IMG/VR virus record: IMGVR_UViG_3300028666_000022
Span: 186,001-250,000 of that record
DNA length: 64,000 bases
Direction: 5' to 3' (one strand)
The stretch's first letter is position 1. Each line of letters starts with the position of its first letter. The position numbers and the translations under genes are program-made. Under the pieces are notes generated by a model. It was not told the DNA's origin. It made no database searches and saw nothing but the letters and a program-made list of their open reading frames with translations. This document shows positions 1 to 62,681 of the stretch, in pieces.

Positions 1-393
1 TAAAGATCGATTAACATAATTTCCAGATAAATCATTTGTATATTGAATTCCCTTAAAATTTGTATCTCCACTAATACTAAATGTTTTATTATTGACATTA
101 ATTAATGTATTTTTTATTAATGTGCCACCCAATTGAATACTTGTTCCTGATATATTTATACCATTTGTTGCATTAACTAACGATTTACTAATTAAATTAA
201 TATCTGCAACACCATTTTTATACCAATATTCTATACCACCAATATTTACGGTTAAACCAGTATATCTATATGATATTGGAACACCCAAATTTACTGCAGA
301 TGTAGATATCCAAGGCGTAGTAACATTTAAATATTTACTGTCAACTGGTTTACCAGTATTAATCGCTAAATTATCATTAAGTATTATTGACAT
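1..393 (-). CDS. Partial (runs off window) virion structural / tail-fibre-like protein
   Basis: Hand translation from ATG at 393: MSIILNDNLAINTGKPVDSKY...RYTGLTVNIGGIEYWYKNG...QLGGTL..., open to position 1. Absent from the ORF track because it is truncated. Gly/Thr/Asn-rich like its neighbours. Confidence 0.7.
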   Translation of the reverse strand, partial: MSIILNDNLAINTGKPVDSKYLNVTTPWISTSAVNLGVPISYRYTGLTVNIGGIEYWYKNGVADINLISKSLVNATNGINISGTSIQLGGTLIKNTLINVNNKTFSISGDTNFKGIQYTNDLSGNYVNRSL

Positions 394-421: not shown

Positions 422-2812
422 TTAGCTTACACACATTGGTACACCACATGCTGTTCCAGTTGTAGTACAACTAACATATACCATATAATTACAACCAGTC
501 CAACAACCTTGTGCTGATGTTACAGCAACAATACAATCCGTTGCAAATAAATTCCCAATACCACCAATACAACCATTATTTAAACTACTAACATACCAAC
601 AAGTTTTAACTGACGTACCATTTGGAACTGCAAACCATATATAATCACTTGGTGAACTGTTAAATATTATTGGTAGTGTACCACTAGCTGAAGCAATACA
701 TTTATTTCCTGCAGCAATATCAGAACTACCAAGTACCTGTGATGTACATTTTCCCCAATACCAAGGCAATATACCAGAAATTGATGATGAAGCAAAACTT
801 GTTGTTCCAGAAGACAATGGAGAACAATAATTACTACCACCACTTCCTTTTGGTTGAATACCAGAATTATATGTTGTATCTACTGACCATGTTTGACTTC
901 CACCAGAAACAACATAATTATTAGCTGTTTTAACTACGCTTGAACCACTACAAACATATAAACCCGCTACTTGAGAGCCAGTAAAACAATATTTATTTGC
1001 AGTTCCACTTCTAAATGGAGAAGTACTACAATATTGTGGACTAATAGATCCTCTATTAAAACATCCAGTAATATTTAAACTAGATATTGAACATCCGATT
1101 TCAAATGTACCTGAAGGAGATAATAAAATTGATGTACTTGGTGCAGTTAATGTACCAAATAATTCTGGTGCTAAAATATCTTGAAATAATTGAAATACTG
1201 TTTTTCCTGTTAATGCAGTACCAATAGTAATTCCACCAACAGTACATGTTGCTGGTGAATTTAGATTATATTTTGCATCATGAACTACAATAGTATTACC
1301 TACTTGGGATAATGCAGTACTACCACTACCCAATAATGAATTAAATCGTAAACAATTGTTTACTTTAGAATCAAATAAACCAATACCAGTTCCAATATTA
1401 ACAGCATTTGTCGTACCTGACGTAGTACCAGTGCTTGTTTGTGTTGCGCCAGAAATAAAAACAAAATTATCATCATAAGAAACACGTATAAGATCATTTG
1501 TTTTTGACATTATGGTTCTTAAATGAAGTTGTTGATTTGTTTTATTTACATAAACTGGTCCACCAATATTATATGTTGTTCCAGTAGTTAAACTACCACT
1601 AACATTTAAAACAACATTACCACCATTATTATATGCTCCTGTTGACCATGTAATACCACTATACATTGCACCAACAGCAGGAAACGCATTTAGAAATGTA
1701 CCAACAGTTTTTGTTATGTCACCATCAACCAAAATCCAACCAACTTGATTTGTTAATCCAGTATAAGTATTATATATCCATGATTTAACTGGAGTTGGTA
1801 TTGTTCTAACATAACCTCTTCTTAATGGTCCATTATAAATTGGAGAACCAATCCTAATTATACCATTAATATCTCTATAATAATAATTATAAACCGAATC
1901 ATATTCACCATTGTAAGCAGGATTAATAGTATTTGATATTATTAATTTTTGTATTCCAGTGCTTCCACTAAAATATCCAACATTTGTTGCACCAGTAACT
2001 GTTTTATTTAAAAATGTTTGTGTTGTACCAGTATATGTATTAAACTGTCCTAATGTAACACCTAGTTGTGTTTGTGTAGTTCCTCTATATTGTATAACAA
2101 TACCAGTATTACCACTAGCTAAAGTAATTAACATTGGTTTAGAAACTTGAGTTAAACCAGTTGGTGAAAATTTAGATAATTTTCCAGAAATACTTGCTAA
2201 ATAATACGTTCTCCCTGCAGTTAATGTTCCACCACTATAATCAACTACACCAGTAGTATTAATATTACCAGAAAAAGTTAAAGTAAAATTACTAATATCT
2301 TTTACAGTACTTACAATACCTAATGGTTCAACCGAAATCGCAGTTGTTGTAGAAACTTTAATAAAAATACTACCATTAAATCCAATTACATCTCCAACAA
2401 TAAAACCATGTGTCAATTGATAAAAATCTTTTGATATTTTTTCCCCCGCTGTAGAAGTACCACCACTAGTAAGAAAAACATTCCAATTGTTATTATCAGC
2501 AAGTGCAGTTAATTTTTGATTAGTAGTATATCCACTCCATACAGAATATGCTACAGATGGTTGTAAATGATATATTATATTATTTTCATATACATGAATA
2601 AGCATTCCTAATCTACGTTGTCCACTAGACAATCCATCAAAATTAATTCCATTAGTATAATCAACTGGTAACGCATCTCTTTCTACTATTGTCGAAACTT
2701 CCATGTATCCACCAACACCCAAAATTGAATGATGTGTACCATAAGTATCACCAGATGAACCTCTAACTATTGGAGAAGCTAATAATGTACCTGTATAATA
2801 TTGACCTGCCAT
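422..2812 (-). CDS. Virion structural protein (fibre/decoration-like), S/T/G-rich, Cys-rich C-terminal region
   Basis: 796 aa, beta-rich composition, THGFIVGDVIGFNG and LTAGRTYYLASISG segments typical of phage structural proteins; 18 Cys, all in the last ~310 aa. Confidence 0.6.
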   Translation of the reverse strand: MAGQYYTGTLLASPIVRGSSGDTYGTHHSILGVGGYMEVSTIVERDALPVDYTNGINFDGLSSGQRRLGMLIHVYENNIIYHLQPSVAYSVWSGYTTNQKLTALADNNNWNVFLTSGGTSTAGEKISKDFYQLTHGFIVGDVIGFNGSIFIKVSTTTAISVEPLGIVSTVKDISNFTLTFSGNINTTGVVDYSGGTLTAGRTYYLASISGKLSKFSPTGLTQVSKPMLITLASGNTGIVIQYRGTTQTQLGVTLGQFNTYTGTTQTFLNKTVTGATNVGYFSGSTGIQKLIISNTINPAYNGEYDSVYNYYYRDINGIIRIGSPIYNGPLRRGYVRTIPTPVKSWIYNTYTGLTNQVGWILVDGDITKTVGTFLNAFPAVGAMYSGITWSTGAYNNGGNVVLNVSGSLTTGTTYNIGGPVYVNKTNQQLHLRTIMSKTNDLIRVSYDDNFVFISGATQTSTGTTSGTTNAVNIGTGIGLFDSKVNNCLRFNSLLGSGSTALSQVGNTIVVHDAKYNLNSPATCTVGGITIGTALTGKTVFQLFQDILAPELFGTLTAPSTSILLSPSGTFEIGCSISSLNITGCFNRGSISPQYCSTSPFRSGTANKYCFTGSQVAGLYVCSGSSVVKTANNYVVSGGSQTWSVDTTYNSGIQPKGSGGSNYCSPLSSGTTSFASSSISGILPWYWGKCTSQVLGSSDIAAGNKCIASASGTLPIIFNSSPSDYIWFAVPNGTSVKTCWYVSSLNNGCIGGIGNLFATDCIVAVTSAQGCWTGCNYMVYVSCTTTGTACGVPMCVS

Positions 2813-2824
2813 TTCTAATTTATT

Positions 2825-3799
2825 TTAAACTACTATAATACTAAATGTTCCAGTTACTCTATTATCTGATCTTGCAACATAATATTGATTACTATATCCA
2901 TTTGTGTTTACAAACGTATTCGTATACAATGTACCAATATTTATATTTCCCCATGCATTATTTGGTAATCCATTTACAGTAAATGTTGGAGTTCCCAATA
3001 CTTTAGGATATGTATAATAAAAAAATTGATTATTTAACGTTATATTAATATTAAGTGCTTTAGTTGTTGATAATATACCAGTCGTAGCACTTAAAACTGG
3101 ATTTATTGCTGAATTACTATATAATGTAGCGTTACCAAAATAAAACTTCTTATTTTGCCAATTAATTGCTGTTGTTGAAGTAGTTGTTTCATTACAACAC
3201 GAAATTGCACATAAACTAAAACCAACTGACGTGCAAGTAATTCCTGAAGCTGGTGTTGTACAAATAAATGGATAAGTATAACTTACTGTTCCACCTGTTG
3301 TCCCAACAGAACCATTTGTTAATATTGCACAATTATATAATCCACTTCCATTAGTACTCCCACTTATATTACGAATAGGATACGTATTCCTTACTACATT
3401 CCAACATAAATTACCCACACTACAATCACCAAATTGCCTTGATGCACCACCAGTTGCAATACTTAAACTTGATGAAGGTCCAACTGCAGGAAAAAAATAA
3501 TTTTCAAGAAAGCATTGAACCGTACATCCTGTACCTGTATTTACTGCTGGAATCCCAGAACGAGTAGTAATACGATTTGTGTTAAAAACAGGAGTACTAC
3601 CAGCACCAGAACAGTGTAATTTAATTTTACCACCAATATATGTTAAAACAGTACCAGTAGTAGCACCAGTTGTAGCATCAATTTCAATTCCCTTTGATTT
3701 TAATACTCCAACAAAATTAGTCGTACCTGACATAGTTAAAGTACTACCAGTCAATTGTTTAAAACTTACATCTTCCAGATTAGGCCTAGCAAAGAACAT
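2825..3799 (-). CDS. Virion structural protein, S/T/G-rich with Cys-rich middle
   Basis: 324 aa, composition like the neighbouring gene; GTATTTATA motif upstream. Confidence 0.55.
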   Translation of the reverse strand: MFFARPNLEDVSFKQLTGSTLTMSGTTNFVGVLKSKGIEIDATTGATTGTVLTYIGGKIKLHCSGAGSTPVFNTNRITTRSGIPAVNTGTGCTVQCFLENYFFPAVGPSSSLSIATGGASRQFGDCSVGNLCWNVVRNTYPIRNISGSTNGSGLYNCAILTNGSVGTTGGTVSYTYPFICTTPASGITCTSVGFSLCAISCCNETTTSTTAINWQNKKFYFGNATLYSNSAINPVLSATTGILSTTKALNINITLNNQFFYYTYPKVLGTPTFTVNGLPNNAWGNINIGTLYTNTFVNTNGYSNQYYVARSDNRVTGTFSIIVV

Positions 3800-3870
3800 A
3801 TGTCTATATTGTATTTATATTATTTTTAATAATTTTAAATAAATTATATTATGTATTTTAATTTATTTAT

Positions 3871-3879
3871 TATAAATAC
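3871..3879 (-). promoter_or_regulatory. Candidate late promoter motif GTATTTATA
   Basis: TATAAATAC on + strand = GTATTTATA on the coding strand; recurs upstream of several structural genes. Confidence 0.5.
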
Positions 3880-3899
3880 AAAAAATTTTAATTAAAATC

Positions 3900-3935
3900 A
3901 AAAATCCTCACAAGATTTAACTTATGAGGATTTTT
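3900..3935. terminator. Intrinsic terminator hairpin downstream of helicase
   Basis: AAAAATCCTCA...TGAGGATTTTT inverted repeat with A/T runs on both sides. Confidence 0.7.
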
Positions 3936-3958
3936 AAAACAATAGTATGGCAATACTA

Positions 3959-6820
3959 TTAAAACTTATTTTTATTCATTTTCATTAATGTATTAATTAA
4001 AAACTTATCACTATCAGTCATTTCATCAACATTATTTATTCTACTCTCAACATCTTCAATACTCTCTTGCGTAATATTATGTTTTTTTAAAATATTTTCA
4101 TGTATCTCTTTATCAACATCAACATTATTATCAGATTCAATTTCAAGTAAATCATGTGCTGGTTGAACATTTTCTTCAACAATAATTGCTTCAATAATAT
4201 CATTATTTTTAGAATTATCAAACTCTTTAATATTATTTCCAAAATCCATTATATCCCCAACAGTTCTATTATCAGAACCATCTGTTGGGATAGCATCACA
4301 TATTCTAGCATGAAATTCTACGGCACTTGCTTTACTCTCTAATTTCTTAATTTCATCATCACCATATTTTTTTATACCTTTATATCTATTACTAGTATAT
4401 CTATCATCCTTAATAATAATTTCCATACTATCATTATTGAAAATACAGTCTTTAAATGTTTGTCCATCTTGAGCAAATCTAGCTTTAAGAATTCTAATAT
4501 TAGCCAAATGTGCTTCTTTTTGATCTGGTGTTTTAGCTACCGACATAAAAAAATGTGCTTTCTGTAATCTTTTAATTGATCCACCAGTATGATGTGATTC
4601 TACTAATTCTTGATCGATTGATCCGCGTCCTCCCTGTAATGCCGACCATGATGGTATATCAAAATCTGCTGCCATTGCTTCAAATGATTTTATTACGACA
4701 AGTTCAGCATCATTTTTATCATTTGTTTTTTTATGTGAATCAACACAATCAAGATAATCAAGAACTAAAATATCAAACTTAAATCCATGTTTTTTTTGAT
4801 ATCTTAAAATCCAACTACGAATATCTTTCATTGTTGTATCTTCTTGACTCATTCTTTTAATAATAAGTCTACCCTTATTTCCTAATTGTTCTATTTTTTC
4901 ATTTACTTTCTTTATGACAATATCATTATTATCATTAATTTCACTTAATTTAACATCACTCCAAATAGTATAATGTTTCCTTTTAATTTGATCTTCCGTA
5001 TCTTCAAATATTATTTGAAGTACATTATAATCTAATTCACGTGCAGTATTAGCTATTTTAGTTAAAATCGTTGTATTATGTGTTAATATATAATCATCAG
5101 TAACATATAAATGATCATCATTTTCAACATATATACATTGTGCATCTTCTTCATGTGAATAAGAAATATTCGAAATATATTTATTATTTTTATATTTTTC
5201 TCTATAAATAACACGATCTTGTTTTCTTTTTAACCTAAATGGTATTAACGTATTGTCAGAAAACGATAATGTTAAAATATACGATTTTTGTCCAATTCTT
5301 ATTTCATTATTATATTTATATTTTGGTATTTTTTCTCGTATACTACAAAATCCACCCAAAGATAAAATTAATTCTTTTACGTCTAAAGCTAATTGTTTAG
5401 AAACACTACAATATTGTATTCTTCCATTTTTTGATGCGTAACCATCAGTATCTAATAAACCATTTAATAATAAAATTCTATTTTCAATACTATTATATTT
5501 GTAATCATCAGGTATAAATTTATTATTAGATAATTTATCAAATAAATTATATTTTTTTAATTCATTTGAACATTTAAATAATCTTATAACAAATAAATCA
5601 TTTTTTTTATTTTTTAATTGTTTTATTGATATATTTTTATCATAAAATTTTTTAATATTATTAATAATTTCAATATCTCCACTAGTTATACGACTATCTC
5701 TCATATAACCATCACCTAACATAGCTCCAATTACATAAGGATGGATTAATACATTTTTCTCATTAAAATTAACTGGTTGAATTATTGGTATTCTGTAATT
5801 TAATTTATTTTCTGATTTTCCGGTCAACCTATAATTTTTCAGTAATGAATCAACGGTTAATGGTTTATATGTATAATTTGGTTTTTTTATATATTTACCC
5901 TTTATTTTAGTACTTAATGTTCGTTGATTTATTGAATTTACTGCCCAAAGATGTTCTTTATCACAAAATGTGGTTGTTTGATCATTAAATTCAATTTTAT
6001 AAATCGGCCTTTTCCCTTGTGGAAAAACACCTAAAACCTTTTGTGATTTTCCATCACTTCCAATAACTAAATCATTAACTTTAACATCACCCATTTTAAT
6101 CCATCCATTTGGTGTAAGTATTTTGGATGTAAGAGGTTGTGCTTTACCAACGCCACTAGGTGTTAAAATTAAACCAATTTCACCTTTACCAAGACCCCCA
6201 CCAGTTAATTCATCAATTACTTGAATACCAGTTGGTATTGTTTGTCTAAATTCTTTTCTTAATGCTTTTTCAATTCCTTCAGTAACATCAGTACCATAAT
6301 CTTCATCATCACCAATATGTCCAATTTTTTGAATTTTTTCTTCAATTAAAGCCAGAGTATTTTTTATTTTAATATCTCCATTTTTTGTCTTATCTAAAAT
6401 AAATTCACCTAATTTTCTATATTCTTGTTGTCTTATGAATGTATGTGTTGCTTTTTGAATTACATCGCCATCGTGTAATAATTGTTTATTTAAAACTCTT
6501 TCATTCCATAATTCAATTCTCCTAATAACTGAAAATAATGATTCTTCTTCAATTACATTATTCGGAGTTTTAAACTTATTTATGGCTTGATGTATACTTT
6601 GATTTTGAAGATTAGGTACTTTCTCAAATTCCTTAATAAATTCAAGTATAATTAGAAATAATCTTTTTAAATTAGGATCATCAAAATATTCAACAGCAAT
6701 ATCTGGTATTATTTTTTCTGCAAATTCTGGTTCTACCAACAGTTGCCACATTAATCTTTGTTGAAATTCAGGACCTAAATATGCTGTTAAAGTATTATCT
6801 TTATCAATATGCTCACTCAT
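3959..6820 (-). CDS. Replicative DnaB/T4 gp41-like helicase, interrupted by an intein
   Basis: IPTGIQVIDELTGGGLGKGE, Walker A TPSGVGK/T split by the intein, Walker B ILVLDYLD, ALQGGR, ILKARF. Confidence 0.9.
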   Translation of the reverse strand: MSEHIDKDNTLTAYLGPEFQQRLMWQLLVEPEFAEKIIPDIAVEYFDDPNLKRLFLIILEFIKEFEKVPNLQNQSIHQAINKFKTPNNVIEEESLFSVIRRIELWNERVLNKQLLHDGDVIQKATHTFIRQQEYRKLGEFILDKTKNGDIKIKNTLALIEEKIQKIGHIGDDEDYGTDVTEGIEKALRKEFRQTIPTGIQVIDELTGGGLGKGEIGLILTPSGVGKAQPLTSKILTPNGWIKMGDVKVNDLVIGSDGKSQKVLGVFPQGKRPIYKIEFNDQTTTFCDKEHLWAVNSINQRTLSTKIKGKYIKKPNYTYKPLTVDSLLKNYRLTGKSENKLNYRIPIIQPVNFNEKNVLIHPYVIGAMLGDGYMRDSRITSGDIEIINNIKKFYDKNISIKQLKNKKNDLFVIRLFKCSNELKKYNLFDKLSNNKFIPDDYKYNSIENRILLLNGLLDTDGYASKNGRIQYCSVSKQLALDVKELILSLGGFCSIREKIPKYKYNNEIRIGQKSYILTLSFSDNTLIPFRLKRKQDRVIYREKYKNNKYISNISYSHEEDAQCIYVENDDHLYVTDDYILTHNTTILTKIANTARELDYNVLQIIFEDTEDQIKRKHYTIWSDVKLSEINDNNDIVIKKVNEKIEQLGNKGRLIIKRMSQEDTTMKDIRSWILRYQKKHGFKFDILVLDYLDCVDSHKKTNDKNDAELVVIKSFEAMAADFDIPSWSALQGGRGSIDQELVESHHTGGSIKRLQKAHFFMSVAKTPDQKEAHLANIRILKARFAQDGQTFKDCIFNNDSMEIIIKDDRYTSNRYKGIKKYGDDEIKKLESKASAVEFHARICDAIPTDGSDNRTVGDIMDFGNNIKEFDNSKNNDIIEAIIVEENVQPAHDLLEIESDNNVDVDKEIHENILKKHNITQESIEDVESRINNVDEMTDSDKFLINTLMKMNKNKF
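5075..6142 (-). mobile_element. Intein (356 aa, class 3-type, Ala1) with LAGLIDADG homing endonuclease
   Basis: Begins AQPLTSKILTPNGW after GVGK and ends YILTHN/T. Block B CDKEHLW, block F AQCIYV, LAGLIDADG motifs PYVIGAMLGDG and LLNGLLDTDG. Confidence 0.9.
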
Positions 6821-17657: not shown

Positions 17658-18143
17658 TTATTCGAATATTTCTGGATATTTTTTCCCAAACTCTCTCATT
17701 ATTAAACCAGCTTTTGAATTTGCTTCGTTTTCAAATTCACTACCATCTTCACCCGAATCTGATTTTAATTTACCTTCTTTATATTGTTTAGTGTGTACTA
17801 ATTCATGTCCTAATGTTCTTAATACATCAGCTAAATTTCTATTAATTGCCACTACTCTTATTTCATTTGCTTCTGGTGTATTTTTACCAAAAGATTTCAT
17901 TTCTTGAGCTTCCTTATTATCATAAGATATTATGATTCTTGGATTATCATCACCTAATTCAAGTTTTTCTTTAACAAAATCAATAAAAATATTAATTATT
18001 TTATTCTTTTCATTAATAGGAAGTACTTCTTCGTTTAATTTCTTTACTGGTTTTTCTTCTTTTTTTTCAATAGGTAGTTTATTAACTTTTTTCATCATAT
18101 CAAAAAGTCTTTCCTTGCTACCTTTTTGGCTAAAAATTCTCAT
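17658..18143 (-). CDS. HExxH zinc-metalloprotease-like small protein, probable head-associated
   Basis: LRTLGHELVH...EFENEAN motif; N-terminus paralogous to 15645..17615. Confidence 0.6.
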   Translation of the reverse strand: MRIFSQKGSKERLFDMMKKVNKLPIEKKEEKPVKKLNEEVLPINEKNKIINIFIDFVKEKLELGDDNPRIIISYDNKEAQEMKSFGKNTPEANEIRVVAINRNLADVLRTLGHELVHTKQYKEGKLKSDSGEDGSEFENEANSKAGLIMREFGKKYPEIFE

Positions 18144-26097: not shown

Positions 26098-27821
26098 TTA
26101 AATAATATTATGTTCTCTTAAAATTTTCTCAATATTATCATAATCAAAATACGCAATTCTAATTAATTTAATATTTTTATCTTTAGCAAATTTATTTTTT
26201 ATTTCATCATTAATTTGTAGTTCTTTAAATTTTTCTTCTCCACCGAAATGTTTAATAATTTTATAATGTTGTATACCGTCAAATTCAATTAGAATGTTTT
26301 GTTCTGGTAAATAAAAATCAAATGGTAAAGATTTTTTATTTCTGCAATTTTCAAATTTTTTTTGATAAATAAAATTTATATTATTTTCTTTTAAAATTTC
26401 AGAAATTTTATTTTCACCCTTTGATTCGTTACATTTAGGACAACAATTATCACGATTTATAAAATTAATGTAACTTACATACCAAATATGATTATCTTTA
26501 TTACATCTTAAATGAATTTTTGTTTGATTATTTTTATATAAAAATTTTTCTATTAATTCATAATTTTTCTTTTTGCATTTATTTAGAACATTTTTTTCTG
26601 CTTCTTCTTGTGTTATTTTTAAAACATTAACACATTTAGAACATCCATGATCTTGACTCACAAAACTACTATAAATTGTTTTCCATATATAATTATCTTT
26701 TTTACATTTTAAATAAATAGTTGTTTCATTATTCACATATATAAAATTTTCAACTAATTCATAGTTTTTTTCTTTACATTTTTTCAAAACTTTTTCTTCA
26801 GCTTCTTGTTGTGTTATTTTTATACTATTTCCACATTTAGGACAACCTTGATTTTGATTAATAAAATTATCATATTTAACATTCCACACATAATTATCTT
26901 TATTACATTTTAAATGAATTTTTGTTTGGTTATTTTCATATGAAAAGTTTTCAACTAAGGTATAGTTTTTTTCTATACATTTTTTTCTGCTTCTCCTTGT
27001 GTTATTTTTGAAACATTACCACATTTAGGACATCCACTTTTATTATGAATAAAACTATCGTATGTTGGTGTCCATTTATACTCATCAATAGTACATTTTA
27101 AATGAATTTTTGTTTTTGTACCTTTATAAATAAATTTATCAAATAAAACATATTTTTTTTCTTTACATTTTTCTAAAACTCTTTCTTCGGCTTCTTGTTG
27201 TGTTATTTTTAAATTTCCATTACATTTAGGACAACCTTGATTTTTATTTATAAATTTATTATATCTTACAAACCATTCATGTTTATCTTTATTACATTTT
27301 AAATGAATTTTTGTTTTATGGTTTTTATAAATAAAATTTTCAACTAATATATAGTTTTTTTCTTTGCACTTTATTAAAACTTTTTTCTCTGCTTCTTCTT
27401 GTGTTATTAATGGTCTATTACCACATTTAGGACATCCACTTTTACTATGAATAAAACTATCATAAATTATATTCCATATATAATTATCTTTATTACATTT
27501 TAAGTGAATTATAGTATCGTTATTAACATATATAAAATTTTTAATTAATTCATAATTTTTTTCTTTACATTTCTCTAAAACTTTTTGTTCGGCTTCTTGT
27601 TGTGTTAATCTTAAGTTTCCACTACATTTAGGGCATCCTTGATTCTTACTAAGAAAATTATTATAAGTTACATACCAATCATACTTATCTTTGTTACATT
27701 TTAAATGAATTTTTGTTTTATTATTTTTATATGAAAAATTTTCAACAAGAATATAGTTTCTTTTCTCACACTTTTTAAAAACATTTTCTTCTGCTTCTTG
27801 TTGTGTTAATTTCTTTAACAT
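26098..27821 (-). pseudogene. Frameshift-split endonuclease: seven ~67-aa Zn-ribbon repeats plus C-terminal PD-(D/E)xK/Vsr-like nuclease
   Basis: ORFs 26973..27821 (4 CPKC repeats) and 26098..26889 (3 repeats + SKGENKI...LPFDFYLP...LIEFDGIQH) join in the -1 frame at the A7 run 26980-26986. Confidence 0.75.
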
Positions 27822-61148: not shown

Positions 61149-62681
61149 TTATAATTTTAATTCATATATAGTATTACCACAATCATAGATTCTATAGTAA
61201 CCCTTTTCTAACATTATCTCATGTTCAGTTTTAGATGGATCAGAATTTTCATTATGATCAGAAAAATAATGCCTATTCAAATCACCCGGTTTAATATATA
61301 AATAATTTGGTTCAGTATTTTTAATAAATTTAAAACCTAATTGTTTAATTGAATCATTATTTAGTTTTCTATCTATTGAAATAGTTATTAGTTTAGGTTT
61401 ATATGTATTCTTAAAATAAGATAAGAATTTACTCGCACAACCATTAATTTTTGTGTTTAATTTATTAGTAAATCTAAGTATCTCATATTCATTATTTAAA
61501 TTATTTTTAAAACACATAACTGATACTAAATCATTATTATAAAACAAACCAATTCTAATATCACTTTCAATAACTCCAGATAAATGATTAATATATAAAA
61601 AATTATCTACTTCTATTTCATTAATTTCTTTAAGTTCACATTTATTAATATCTATTATGTTGTTAAATATGTTTAATCTACATAAAATATTTGAAACTAC
61701 AACATCGGTTTTAAATAATATTTCATCCTCGAAGAAATGTAATAATTTAATTTCTCTTTTTTCACATAATAGAGTTTTGTTTAAATGATAATCATTATTT
61801 TTATAGAGTTCACAATGCCAGTACATGCCATTAATTTCAATGGCTAATTTATATTTTGGTAAATTAATATCTAATTCTAAGCCACTTAGTAATTTTCTAT
61901 TATTTAATTCGTATTCAATGTTATTTTCTTTTAATTTGTTAATAATTATTTCAACAATGCTTGAAAAAGACTTTCTTTTATTACAATTTAAACAAATTTT
62001 ATTTCCTCGATATAGTCTTGATGTTATTAAATTGCTATCAATAACAAATTCACTTTTACATATATTACAATAAAAATGCACAACACCATTATCACGTTTA
62101 ATAAATTTTAATGTATCATCATTAATTCTGTTTAACATACGTTTTAGATTGAATTCATCTCCACTTAAAACTAATTGTTTTCTATTATCAATAACTGATT
62201 GAATTTTCATTGGACTATCAACACCATAATTATTAAATAATGTATTATTAAATTTTTCTCTAATTTCCTTAGATTGTAAAGGACTTTCAACTCCATAATT
62301 TTTAAGTGTAGTTTGCTTTTTCTTTTCTTTAACAGAATCTAATTGGTTATGGCTCTCAACACCATATTTATTCATATTACTATCTTTAATTTTTTCTTTA
62401 TGTTCTTCTGAGGAATTTAAACAATTAATTGAACAATATTTACTATGTCCCTTATTAAGAGTATCGACAAATTTTACGTTATTACCACAATTTGGACATT
62501 TAGGAACATCTTTTAAATCATTAATATAAAGATAAACTTTTTCTTTAAAAGGAATTGTTTTATCATTTGAATTTTCAATAATTGCAGTATATAACTCATT
62601 ATGATTTTTACTAAGCCAATTTTCGGTTGTTTTAAATCCAGATTTATTGTCTTTTAAAAAGAAATCTTTTACATTTTCCAT
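61149..62681 (-). CDS. Homing-endonuclease-like protein (Zn fingers, KYGV repeats, PD-(D/E)xK/Vsr-like domain)
   Basis: CPNC...YCS..C; three YGV[ED]S repeats; ELDINLPKYKLAIEINGMYWH; C-terminal GYYRIYDCG. Confidence 0.7.
   Translation of the reverse strand: MENVKDFFLKDNKSGFKTTENWLSKNHNELYTAIIENSNDKTIPFKEKVYLYINDLKDVPKCPNCGNNVKFVDTLNKGHSKYCSINCLNSSEEHKEKIKDSNMNKYGVESHNQLDSVKEKKKQTTLKNYGVESPLQSKEIREKFNNTLFNNYGVDSPMKIQSVIDNRKQLVLSGDEFNLKRMLNRINDDTLKFIKRDNGVVHFYCNICKSEFVIDSNLITSRLYRGNKICLNCNKRKSFSSIVEIIINKLKENNIEYELNNRKLLSGLELDINLPKYKLAIEINGMYWHCELYKNNDYHLNKTLLCEKREIKLLHFFEDEILFKTDVVVSNILCRLNIFNNIIDINKCELKEINEIEVDNFLYINHLSGVIESDIRIGLFYNNDLVSVMCFKNNLNNEYEILRFTNKLNTKINGCASKFLSYFKNTYKPKLITISIDRKLNNDSIKQLGFKFIKNTEPNYLYIKPGDLNRHYFSDHNENSDPSKTEHEIMLEKGYYRIYDCGNTIYELKL

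What the first reader, a model, noticed from the sequence alone, without database searches (positions are those of the whole stretch)
422..3799. Sharply delimited Cys-rich zones in virion proteins, complementary to the motif-rich zone
Seen: the 796-aa protein has no Cys in its first ~485 aa, where 15 of its 18 [S/T]GxT motifs lie, and 18 Cys in the last ~310 aa. The 324-aa protein has 11 Cys confined to about aa 60-200. The Cys residues are isolated, not CxxC, and sit in S/T-rich beta-strand contexts (ATCTV, TGCFN, KYCFT, KTCWY). Inference: they may be a second class of modification acceptor (S-glycosylation, or S-acylation given FabH and the acyltransferases), an inter-subunit disulfide lattice, or a metal-binding surface. 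This much unpaired Cys is unusual for cytoplasmically assembled virion proteins.
Basis: partly seen in the sequence, partly recalled or inferred. Interest (0 to 1): 0.65.

Follow-up and report, generated by a model that had tools for sequence, protein, structure and literature searches.

The report
Cysteine-rich tips on phage tail fibres
Two genes of an uncultured 340-kb T4-like phage encode tail-fibre-type proteins whose outer "tip" domains carry unusually many cysteines; these cysteines are poorly conserved and were lost completely in several related phages, so they are probably an optional reactive-thiol or cross-linking coat, not a fixed structural or catalytic feature.

Summary
The counts are correct. 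The 796-aa protein has 18 Cys, all at aa 487-794. The 324-aa protein has 11 Cys, all at aa 63-202. Both clusterings are non-random.

The zone edges follow domain edges. The Cys-rich part is a conserved fibre-tip module: a neck with a short helix, an Ig/PKD-like beta-sandwich and a second beta-sandwich. It forms the C-terminus of the 796-aa protein, the whole 324-aa protein (a distant homologue) and a 333-aa paralogue. The Cys-free N-terminus is a separate anchor-plus-shaft module.

The Cys are not ordinary conserved disulfides:
- Only 1 of 18 positions is near-invariant.
- Cys counts are odd as often as even.
- Pairwise coupling is weak.
- 32 of 120 homologues of the 324-aa protein have 0-1 Cys (30 have none), through at least three independent changes.
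- Cys columns otherwise hold mostly S/T/N.

The genome has no thiol oxidoreductase, DGR or SunS-like glycosyltransferase. GC content does not explain the pattern.

My best reading is a lineage-variable, mostly surface thiol coat that becomes partly disulfide cross-linked after cell lysis. This mechanism is inferred, not shown. Metal binding, S-linked modification and tolerated drift remain open. Interest is moderate: a new variant of a known kind.

The parts
422..2812 (-). Gene for the 796-aa fibre-type protein (P0001).
   Evidence: ORF. It has 63 homologues over the C-terminal part and no Pfam or PHROG family.
2084..2812 (-). P0001 aa 1-243: conserved N-terminal anchor module, with no Cys.
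   Evidence: It is 42% identical over aa 8-243 to the N-terminus of a 1117-aa neighbour of the P0002 homologue in a related 371-kb contig. That protein has a different, Cys-poor C-terminus. Weak ESM Atlas leads point to phage collar, BppL and fibre clusters.
1358..2083 (-). P0001 aa 244-485: S/T/G/N-rich shaft, rich in [ST]GxT motifs, with no Cys.
   Evidence: 15 motifs in aa 1-485 against 1.9 expected. The fold was not determined.
1160..1351 (-). P0001 aa 488-551: neck with a short helix (aa 539-547), the predicted trimer interface. It holds C523, and C487 lies at its edge.
   Evidence: Secondary structure. The homotrimer prediction scored ipSAE 0.58 against a best control of 0.00. Three runs agreed in at least 86% of contacts, partner pLDDT was 87 or more, and the interface residues were 11-74 of the construct.
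770..1150 (-). P0001 aa 555-681: Ig/FN3-like beta-sandwich holding 6 Cys (574, 584, 595, 609, 621, 663).
   Evidence: AF2 pLDDT above 90. VIA-align Z 7.9, rmsd 3.0-3.3 over 86-94 residues, to Ig-like domains.
425..769 (-). P0001 aa 682-796: C-terminal beta-sandwich holding 10 Cys, including the only near-invariant one (C770, next to invariant W771).
   Evidence: The whole tip module matches predicted phage tail, tail-fibre and minor-tail proteins in BFVD at E down to 5e-13, TM 0.56-0.64.
2825..3799 (-). Gene for the 324-aa protein (P0002), a stand-alone distant homologue of the tip module.
   Evidence: More than 120 homologues. hhalign of A1 against A2 gave probability 89.5%, E 2e-6 over 215 columns. 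It lies 12 bp upstream of P0001.
3194..3613 (-). P0002 aa 63-202: the Cys zone (11 Cys).
3152..3487 (-). P0002 aa 105-216: PKD/Ig-like beta-sandwich, which holds most of the Cys zone.
   Evidence: AF2 pLDDT above 90. VIA-align Z 9.4, rmsd 2.8 over 95 residues, to a PKD domain.
2828..3151 (-). P0002 aa 217-324: C-terminal beta-sandwich, Cys-free in this protein.
   Evidence: ESM Atlas shape matches are to viral (Uroviricota) clusters, TM 0.62-0.68.
1..393 (-). First 131 aa of the next gene, a 489-aa tail-fibre-type protein that runs off the window.
   Evidence: PHROG tail fibre protein at 9e-24, and virion structural protein families. It has 4 Cys, all at aa 399 or later.
3898..3937 (-). Terminator-like hairpin between dnaB and the 324-aa gene, so the fibre genes start a transcription unit of their own.
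   Evidence: 17-pair stem followed by a T-run, then an AT-rich spacer. This is a consensus match only.

Best explanation
SHOWN.
- The window lies in a complete 339,898-bp, 25%-GC phage genome with direct terminal repeats. It encodes a T4 Gp23-type capsid protein and a T4-type baseplate hub.
- The two ORFs open a run of S/T/G/N-rich fibre or adhesin genes.
- The Cys-rich zones coincide with one conserved, portable tip module: a neck with a helix, an Ig/PKD-like sandwich and a second sandwich.
- The Cys-free 485 aa of the large protein is a different module (anchor plus shaft).
- Within the tip module Cys is a labile character. Positions turn over as fast as ordinary residues, and counts range from 0 to about 22.
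- Cys alternates mainly with S/T/N and sits at strand ends and loops.
- The Cys-free state (0-1 Cys) arose or reverted at least 3 times in relatives.

INFERRED.
- Most of these Cys are solvent-exposed thiols on the three splayed-out tip arms of a trimeric fibre.
- Their density, 4-6 times the proteome level, is kept up by selection on thiol content and not on particular sites.
- The virion assembles in the reducing cytoplasm and the phage encodes no oxidase. So the thiols would stay free until lysis.
- After lysis they would oxidise into a few local disulfides (candidates C760-C770, C574-C621 and the co-occurring C774/C782). They would also form opportunistic links with the other Cys-rich fibre proteins of the same virion. 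This would harden or bundle the exposed fibres.
- Lineages without Cys do without this.

I hold the domain and identity part at about 0.85 and the cross-linking mechanism at about 0.4.
For: Genome and context. Neighbouring genes hit PHROG tail fibre (9e-24), baseplate protein and YadA-head repeats.

Module definition:
- AF2 models with pLDDT 86.
- Ig/PKD-like fold matches.
- BFVD matches to tail, tail-fibre and minor-tail proteins at E down to 5e-13.
- The two families are homologous by hhalign.
- A paralogue lies at genome 183899-184900.
- The N-terminal module is shared with a protein that has a different C-terminus.
- A Cys-free homologue sits between the prohead protease and portal genes of another phage.

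Lability of Cys.

The Cys-free state needs at least 3 changes on a tree built with Cys masked.

Alternates at Cys columns are 42-54% S/T/N against a 32-34% background, and are depleted in F/L/W/Y.

Half of the Cys are at strand ends or in loops.

The predicted trimer has its interface only at aa 488-551: ipSAE 0.58 against a best control of 0.00, contact agreement of at least 86%, partner pLDDT of at least 87. The tool's calibration counts are 20/30 against 1/23, and hold only roughly here.

The enrichment is specific to fibre-like ORFs:
- Fibre-like ORFs have 2.7% Cys against 1.3% for the rest.
- The capsid protein has 0.5%.
- The T4-type baseplate hub ORF (310 aa) has none, and neither do twelve further ORFs of 250 aa or more, mostly unannotated (477, 656 and 840 aa among them).

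Other fibre-like ORFs of this genome carry poly-Cys runs.

Precedent for Cys-rich regions that disulfide-link tail parts in a myophage: cyanophage Pam3, PMC9942802.
Against: - No coordinates were available, so no Cys-Cys distance or solvent accessibility was measured.
- The habitat and its redox state are unknown. One low-Cys relative comes from sea water above a cold seep.
- Coordination of Cys level among the fibre proteins of one genome is only a trend: rho 0.52, p 0.23, n = 7, with one clear exception.
- C774 and C782 flank a single predicted strand, so their perfect co-occurrence may be a clade signature and not a bond.
- 16 of the 18 Cys lie outside the predicted inter-chain interface.
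- No virion proteomics exists for this uncultured clade.
Confidence: 0.5

Rival explanations
1. Tolerated drift. The tip module evolves fast at polar surface positions, and Cys is simply allowed where virions rarely meet oxidants. Lineages in oxic settings purge it. The Cys have no function of their own.
For: Cys are no better conserved than average residues. Cys-free homologues keep the fold-defining W/G/P columns. In one clade counts fall stepwise, 8, 6, 5, 4, then 0.
Against: Density is 4-6 times the proteome level and is confined to fibre-like ORFs. The baseplate hub and several other large ORFs have none. The count distribution is bimodal: 32 homologues with 0-1 Cys against 4-17 in almost all the rest. 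GC and AT bias do not track it: a Cys-free relative has 26% GC and a Cys-rich one 33%.
Confidence: 0.2
2. Metal- or mineral-binding thiolate surface. The exposed Cys chelate Zn, Fe or Cu, or attach to metal-sulfide particles or metal-rich host surfaces.
For: Other fibre-like ORFs of the same genome carry metallothionein-like Cys runs and a (CS)x16 tail. Many Cys sit at polar surface-type positions.
Against: Neither protein has a CxxC or CxC motif, nor any conserved Cys geometry. Cys-free homologues exist. The poly-Cys tail is a recent 18-bp tandem-repeat expansion that is absent from homologues.
Confidence: 0.12
3. S-linked modification acceptors. The Cys are glycosylated, or acylated, by the phage's own sugar and acyl enzymes, in parallel with O-glycosylation of S/T.
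For: A 20-kb nucleotide-sugar and glycosyltransferase cluster lies in the same window. Cys columns alternate with S/T/N, the other glycan acceptor residues.
Against: S/T/N are also the commonest residues in these proteins, so the enrichment is modest: 42-54% against 32-34%. No glycosyltransferase matches an S-glycosyltransferase family; all are generic polysaccharide GT2/GT4 hits below the curated cut-offs. FabH, a FabG-like reductase and a hexapeptide acyltransferase sit among sugar dehydratase, aminotransferase and epimerase genes, which fits synthesis of an N-acyl amino sugar (inference). To my knowledge S-glycosylation is known only from small glycocin peptides.
Confidence: 0.1
4. Ordinary structural disulfides: fixed intradomain pairs that stabilise two extracellular beta-sandwich domains.
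For: Ig-like domains often carry a disulfide. Three column pairs co-occur fairly well: 774/782 with Jaccard 1.0, 760/770 with 0.84 and 574/621 with 0.69.
Against: Only 1 of 18 positions in the large protein and 0 of 11 in the small one are conserved at 90% or more. Parity is half odd. The mean Jaccard of the best pairing is 0.46-0.54 against 0.34-0.44 for shuffled columns. Cys-free members exist at 44% identity over the whole module.
Confidence: 0.06
5. Targeted hypermutation by a diversity-generating retroelement. AAY codons in a variable region would mutate to TGY and other codons, giving Cys/Asn/Ser/Thr alternation.
For: The Cys, N, S, T alternation resembles the outcome of adenine mutagenesis.
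Against: The genome has no reverse transcriptase. No template-like repeat of the region exists anywhere in the genome. The variable positions span about 300 aa across two domains.
Confidence: 0.01

Closest known systems
Modular phage tail fibres and receptor-binding proteins (conserved N-terminal anchor, exchangeable C-terminal tip), including predicted tail, tail-fibre and minor-tail proteins of crAss-like and Tenacibaculum phages
   Same: There is a conserved N-terminal module with swapped C-termini. The stalk is predicted to be a trimer. The tip module matches such proteins structurally in BFVD at E down to 5e-13. Neighbouring genes hit tail-fibre PHROGs.
   Different: There is no sequence family membership in Pfam, PHROG or PDB. 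Cys density of 5.8-7.9% in the tip is unusual for phage structural proteins of this genome.
Ig-like domains displayed on phage virions (for example T4 Hoc; from my own knowledge of Fraser et al. 2006)
   Same: The Ig/FN3/PKD-like sandwich is predicted with high confidence and sits on an exposed virion appendage.
   Different: No Pfam Ig-type family is hit. The domain is paired with a second sandwich and a trimerising neck. The known phage Ig-like domains are not noted for being Cys-rich (my knowledge).
Cyanophage Pam3: tail fibres linked covalently to Cys-rich regions of the baseplate wedge by disulfides (PMC9942802)
   Same: It is a myophage whose tail apparatus uses Cys-rich regions and post-assembly disulfides. 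Reduction detaches the fibres.
   Different: In Pam3 the Cys are defined docking sites: fibre Cys28 bonds to wedge Cys. Here the fibre's N-terminal anchor has no Cys at all, and the Cys lie in the distal tip at non-conserved positions.
Inter-subunit disulfides that form after release in Qbeta and PP7 capsids, and Cys-rich self-assembling spore-coat proteins such as CotY/ExsY (my own knowledge)
   Same: These are structures assembled in the cytoplasm that gain stability from disulfides once exposed to oxidant, without a dedicated oxidase.
   Different: Those use fixed Cys positions in a lattice. No lattice or fixed positions are shown here.
Glycocin S-glycosylation (SunS, GccA, ThuS; my own knowledge)
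   Same: Cys in exposed loops, with glycosyltransferases of family GT2 encoded nearby.
   Different: No SunS-type enzyme was detected. The substrates here would be large folded fibre domains, not small peptides.

Membership tests
Phage tail fibre / receptor-binding protein | The gene lies in a virion tail or fibre gene context. | tested here: met
   The next gene hits PHROG tail fibre at 9e-24. A 171-aa neighbour hits baseplate and proximal tail-fibre PHROGs. Further neighbours carry YadA-head repeats. A terminator-like hairpin separates the fibre genes from dnaB.
Phage tail fibre / receptor-binding protein | Modular build: a conserved N-terminal anchor and an exchangeable C-terminal tip. | tested here: met
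   (shared aa 8-243 with a different C-terminus). (the same tip sits on proteins of 446-1121 aa).
Phage tail fibre / receptor-binding protein | Homotrimeric assembly. | tested here: inconclusive
   The prediction passes: ipSAE 0.58 against a best control of 0.00, contact agreement of at least 86%, partner pLDDT of at least 87. The tool's counts are 20/30 solved pairs against 1/23 single chains, and hold only roughly for three copies and my own alignment. This is a model, not a measurement.
Phage tail fibre / receptor-binding protein | Presence in the virion and binding to a host receptor. | not testable with these tools
   The clade is uncultured, and no cultured relative is in the phage collection.
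Ig-like / PKD / FN3 beta-sandwich domains | Fold match to solved domains. | tested here: met
   Z 9.4 (rmsd 2.8, 95 aligned) for P0002 and Z 7.9 (rmsd 3.0-3.3, 86-94 aligned) for P0001. Z near 8 is a common arrangement, so this shows fold class only.
Ig-like / PKD / FN3 beta-sandwich domains | Sequence membership in a curated family. | tested here: not met
   No Pfam hit and no PDB sequence or profile hit.
Disulfide-stabilised extracellular domain | Cys are the best-conserved residues. | tested here: not met
   1 of 18 and 0 of 11 positions are conserved at 90% or more. 13 of 18 are shared at 66% identity.
Disulfide-stabilised extracellular domain | Even Cys number and co-varying pairs. | tested here: not met
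   Parity is 19:19 and 43:43. Only 774/782, 760/770 and 574/621 co-occur well.
Disulfide-stabilised extracellular domain | S-gamma atoms within bonding distance. | not testable with these tools
   Model coordinates are not returned.
Metal-binding Cys cluster (zinc ribbon or metallothionein type) | Conserved CxxC or CxC motifs. | tested here: not met
   No CxxC is present, and the gaps between Cys are 1-51 residues with no fixed pattern. The positions are not conserved. Such runs do occur in other ORFs of the genome.
Glycocin-type S-glycosylation system | A SunS-family S-glycosyltransferase. | tested here: not met
   NCBIfam gives only generic polysaccharide GT2/GT4 hits below cut-off for the three large glycosyltransferases.
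Diversity-generating retroelement target | A reverse transcriptase and a template repeat. | tested here: not met
   No RVT_1 match and no near-identical repeat of the region.
Virus-encoded cytoplasmic disulfide pathway (Erv1/ALR type, as in large eukaryotic DNA viruses) | A sulfhydryl oxidase or thioredoxin-fold partner encoded by the virus. | tested here: not met
   No thioredoxin, glutaredoxin or DsbA match, with controls that rang. No Erv1 match either, but its control rang nowhere, so that one search is inconclusive.
Pam3-type fibre-baseplate disulfide docking | Cys in the fibre's N-terminal attachment domain. | tested here: not met
   There is no Cys in aa 1-486 of the large protein.

The most novel reading that the evidence does not exclude
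The fibre tips of this phage clade carry a switchable coat of reactive thiols. The coat is kept at high density by selection on composition and was discarded wholesale in some lineages. It would do chemistry at the cell surface or in the environment: covalent thiol-disulfide capture of a host surface protein, redox-triggered bundling or release of fibres, or anchoring to metal sulfides. That would be an adsorption or stability mechanism not described for tailed phages.
Probability: 0.15. Interest if true: 0.8.

Novelty: new variant of a known kind. Interest (0 to 1): 0.5.

Why it matters
Phage structural proteins are usually poor in Cys. Here a whole set of exposed fibre proteins is enriched 4-6 fold, while the capsid and baseplate-hub proteins of the same genome have few or none. 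Related phages switch between many Cys and none.

If the thiols are functional, this gives a natural, phylogenetically replicated experiment. Cys-rich and Cys-free versions of one fold could show how virions use redox chemistry outside the cell. It also offers a portable tip module for testing covalent or redox-gated adsorption.

If they are not functional, the pattern is a useful marker of the redox conditions under which these uncultured jumbo phages live.

Tried and rejected
- Pfam, PHROG and PDB sequence or profile searches of both proteins gave nothing.
- tblastn against cultured and deposited phages found only a 100-aa N-terminal match and one weak match in a 642-kb uncultured phage.
- The search for related loci in viral contigs gave nothing.
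- The DGR idea was rejected: no reverse transcriptase and no template repeat.
- A phage-encoded thiol oxidoreductase was not found (the Erv1 search is inconclusive because its control did not ring).
- AT-bias as the driver of Cys codons was rejected. The amino-acid proxy correlates weakly and in the wrong direction, and GC of Cys-free against Cys-rich relatives overlaps.
- I tried to infer host oxygen use from ribonucleotide reductase class. This genome has neither NrdD nor a class I small subunit.
- Coordination of Cys level among the fibre proteins of one genome is a trend only.
One relative could be traced to cold-seep sea water through a paper.
- The large representative-protein search was not used.
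- Cys-Cys distances could not be measured because the structure tools return no coordinates.
- The literature search found no description of Cys-rich fibre tips in jumbo phages.


Full report
**Where the window lies.** The window is bases 186001-250000 of a 339,898-bp virus record with direct terminal repeats, rated complete. GC is 25%. The genome encodes a T4 Gp23-type major capsid protein. It also has a T4-type baseplate hub, a UvsX/RecA-like protein and a DnaB helicase interrupted by an intein-sized insert. It is therefore an uncultured T4-like jumbo myophage. No cultured relative turned up in the phage collection.

**The observation.**
- The 796-aa ORF (P0001, window 422-2812, minus strand) has 18 Cys, all between aa 487 and 794. 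It has 18 [ST]GxT motifs, 15 of them before aa 485.
- The 324-aa ORF (P0002, window 2825-3799, minus strand) has 11 Cys, all between aa 63 and 202.
- The clustering is far beyond chance. For P0001 the probability is 4e-8, and 0 of 200,000 permutations gave a span as short. For P0002 the permutation p is 0.001.
- Cys density in the zones is 5.8% and 7.9%, against 1.3% for the genome's ORFs.

Two details need trimming.
- The Cys are not all isolated. There is a CC doublet, two CxxxC, and five Cys in the last 27 residues.
- The complementarity with the motif zone is weak. The 15:3 split gives p = 0.04, and in P0002 four of the seven motifs lie inside the Cys zone.

The motif enrichment in the N-terminal part is itself real: 15 observed against 1.9 expected on shuffling.

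**What the zones are.** Neither protein belongs to a Pfam or PHROG family. Both have many metagenomic homologues, mostly on contigs of up to 370 kb: 63 for the C-terminal 317 aa of P0001 and more than 120 for P0002.

AlphaFold2 with these alignments gives confident models (mean pLDDT 86, above 90 over the folded parts).
- In P0001 the layout is a neck with a short helix (aa 539-547), an Ig/FN3-like sandwich (aa 555-681; Z 7.9, rmsd 3.0-3.3, 86-94 aligned) and a second sandwich (aa 682-796).
- P0002 has the same layout, with a PKD/Ig-like sandwich at aa 105-216 (Z 9.4, rmsd 2.8, 95 aligned).
- Profile-profile comparison shows the two families are distantly homologous across helix, sandwich 1 and sandwich 2 (probability 89.5%, E 2e-6, 215 columns).
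- A 333-aa paralogue with 14 Cys lies just outside the window.

Against predicted viral structures the module matches proteins named tail protein, minor tail protein C-terminal domain and tail fibre protein. Several come from crAss-like and Tenacibaculum phages (E down to 5e-13, TM 0.56-0.64).

The N-terminal 243 aa of P0001 recur at 42% identity on a 1117-aa protein of a related 371-kb contig. That protein has a different, almost Cys-free C-terminus. This is the classical fibre pattern of a conserved anchor and an exchangeable tip.

Context agrees.
- The next gene hits PHROG tail fibre protein at 9e-24.
- A 171-aa neighbour hits baseplate and proximal-fibre PHROGs.
- Two further neighbours carry YadA-head repeats.
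- A Cys-free homologue of the tip sits between the prohead protease and portal genes of another phage.
- A terminator-like hairpin separates dnaB from the 324-aa gene.

So 'sharply delimited' means domain-delimited. The Cys-free part and the Cys-rich part are different modules.

**How the Cys behave in the family.**
- In the P0001 tip alignment (39 sequences) only C770, next to an invariant Trp, is near-invariant. Seven positions are Cys in 50-90% of sequences and ten in fewer than half.
- In the P0002 alignment (118 sequences) no Cys position exceeds 60%.
- Against its closest homologue (66% identity) P0001 shares 13 of 18 Cys columns. So Cys are no better conserved than the average residue.
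- Thirty-nine alignment columns hold Cys in at least four of 38 sequences.
- The number of Cys per module is odd as often as even: 19:19 and 43:43.
- The best possible one-to-one pairing of Cys columns gives a mean Jaccard index of 0.46-0.54, against 0.34-0.44 for shuffled columns. Only 774/782 (1.0), 760/770 (0.84) and 574/621 (0.69) stand out.
- C774 and C782 flank a single predicted strand, so even that pair may be a clade signature.

Homologues with no Cys at all exist for both families.
- One is a 446-aa protein 44% identical over the whole tip.
- The Cys count distribution for P0002 homologues is bimodal. Thirty of 120 have none and two have one; almost all the rest have 4-17.
- On a tree built with Cys masked, this Cys-free state (0-1 Cys) needs at least three changes. 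In one clade the counts fall stepwise, 8, 6, 5, 4, then 0.

Where homologues lack the Cys they mostly have S, T or N: 42-54% against a 32-34% background. Bulky hydrophobics and Gly are depleted. Half of the Cys sit at strand ends or in loops. A minority of positions (523, 705, 770, 774) alternate with V/I/L and look buried.

**What does not explain it.**
- There is no reverse transcriptase and no template-like repeat, so no diversity-generating retroelement.
- There is no phage thioredoxin, glutaredoxin or DsbA. No Erv1 match was found either, though the control for that search did not ring.
- Composition bias fails. A Cys-free relative has 26% GC, a Cys-rich one 33% and another Cys-free one 38%. 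An amino-acid proxy for AT-richness correlates weakly and in the wrong direction.
- The three large glycosyltransferases of the window's sugar cluster give only generic polysaccharide GT2/GT4 hits, not an S-glycosyltransferase.
- FabH, a FabG-like reductase and a hexapeptide acyltransferase lie among sugar dehydratase, aminotransferase and epimerase genes. That fits synthesis of an N-acylated amino sugar better than protein S-acylation. This last point is my inference.

**Oligomer.** A three-copy prediction of the tip construct passes the tool's mark.
- The score is ipSAE 0.58 against a best control of 0.00.
- The three runs agree in at least 86% of contacts, and partner pLDDT is at least 87.
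- The tool's calibration counts are 20 of 30 solved pairs against 1 of 23 single chains. They hold only roughly here, because I used three copies and my own alignment.
- The confident interface is confined to aa 488-551, the neck and helix. It includes C523, and C487 lies at its edge.
- The two sandwiches, which carry the other 16 Cys, do not touch each other.

If this is right, the fibre ends in three splayed arms, and those 16 Cys cannot form inter-chain bonds within one trimer. They would be intradomain, free, or available to other molecules.

**The wider genome.** The pattern is not limited to the two ORFs.
- Fibre-like ORFs (S+T+G+N at 36% or more) average 2.7% Cys against 1.3% for the rest.
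- The capsid protein has 3 Cys in 557 aa.
- The 310-aa T4-type baseplate hub ORF has none. Neither do twelve further ORFs of 250 aa or more, most of them unannotated, including ones of 477, 656 and 840 aa.
- A second cluster, outside the window, holds far more extreme cases. A 263-aa ORF has a 26-residue run that is mostly Cys. A 409-aa ORF has 38 Cys. A 657-aa ORF has 52 Cys and ends in (CS)x16, encoded by an 18-bp tandem repeat. Its Cys-rich homologues lack that tail.
- In seven related loci the Cys level of the P0002 homologue and of the other fibre-like ORFs goes the same way only as a trend (rho 0.52, p 0.23), with one clear exception.

**Mechanism.**
Shown: the zones are a portable fibre-tip module, and the Cys in it are enriched, labile, mostly at polar positions and repeatedly lost as a set.

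Inferred: the enrichment is kept up by selection on thiol content and not on specific sites.
- The virion assembles in a reducing cytoplasm without a viral oxidase, so the thiols are free at assembly.
- After lysis some would close into local disulfides. Others would link the several Cys-rich fibre proteins of the virion, stiffening or bundling the distal fibres.
- Lineages that lost all Cys do without this.
- A precedent for disulfide-linked tail parts through Cys-rich regions exists in cyanophage Pam3, where reduction detaches the fibres (PMC9942802). There the sites are fixed and lie in the fibre's N-terminus and the wedge, which is not the case here.

I put about 0.85 on the identity and domain part and about 0.4 on cross-linking as the function. 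Rivals are tolerated drift (0.2), a metal-binding thiolate surface (0.12), S-linked modification (0.1), fixed structural disulfides as the whole story (0.06) and a DGR (0.01).

**Limits.**
- No model coordinates, so no distances or accessibilities.
- No habitat metadata. One low-Cys relative was traced to sea water above a South China Sea cold seep.
- No virion proteomics.
- The large representative search and read laying were not used.

**Verdict.** I class this as a new variant of a known kind: a tail-fibre tip module with an unusual, evolutionarily switchable Cys load. Interest is moderate.

Noticed in passing
G000:C1:127225-133479 (outside the window; L014:2225-8479): A second cluster of fibre-like ORFs is far richer in Cys. 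A 263-aa ORF has a 26-residue run that is mostly Cys. A 409-aa ORF has 38 Cys and ends in a Cys run. A 657-aa ORF has 52 Cys and ends in (CS)x16, encoded by an 18-bp tandem repeat (5.6 copies, 98% identity). Homologues of the 657-aa ORF are Cys-rich (3.8-6.7%) but lack the tail. None has a Pfam or PHROG hit.
   Followed up: partly
G000:C1:178133-181150 (L006:2133-5150): Two YadA-head-repeat proteins (695 aa with 35 Cys, 296 aa with 13 Cys) have Cys scattered at varying positions of the repeat unit.
   Followed up: partly
window 22500-42900: A large nucleotide-sugar and glycan cluster. It holds a GDP-mannose-dehydratase-like enzyme, a DegT aminotransferase, a CapD/PseB-like dehydratase, an RmlD-like enzyme, a WecB-like epimerase, FabH, a FabG-like reductase, a hexapeptide acyltransferase, two GT2 proteins and a GT2/GT4 fusion. 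This suggests the phage makes an N-acylated amino sugar. The target (virion, host surface or DNA) is unknown.
   Followed up: partly
window 422-2812, aa 1-485 of the 796-aa protein: [ST]GxT is truly over-represented in the shaft part: 15 observed against 1.9 expected on shuffling. It is also over-represented in the 324-aa protein, 7 against 1.3.
   Followed up: partly
window 3959-6820: The DnaB-type helicase is 953 aa and carries an insert of intein/homing-endonuclease size. Related phages have 543-664-aa versions.
   Followed up: no
G000:C1:182238-183194 (L006:6238-7194) and window 61149-62681: Homing endonucleases. A GIY-YIG/NUMOD gene sits in the middle of the fibre gene run, and a 510-aa HNH-type gene lies in the window.
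   Followed up: no
window 26973-27821: A 282-aa protein with 16 Cys is explained by CapR-homology and treble-clef/zinc-ribbon domains. This is a conventional Cys-rich protein, for contrast.
   Followed up: yes
window 3805-3898: The AT-rich spacer upstream of the 324-aa gene shares 50-80-bp similarity (72-86% identity) with several other intergenic sites of the genome. It may be a shared promoter element.
   Followed up: no
L008:15204-16430: A relative's fibre region carries an IS605 OrfB / Cas12f-like TnpB gene.
   Followed up: no
window 17658-18143: A 161-aa ORF has weak, below-cut-off hits to metallopeptidase toxin/effector families (Tox-MPTase3, Peptidase_M91).
   Followed up: no
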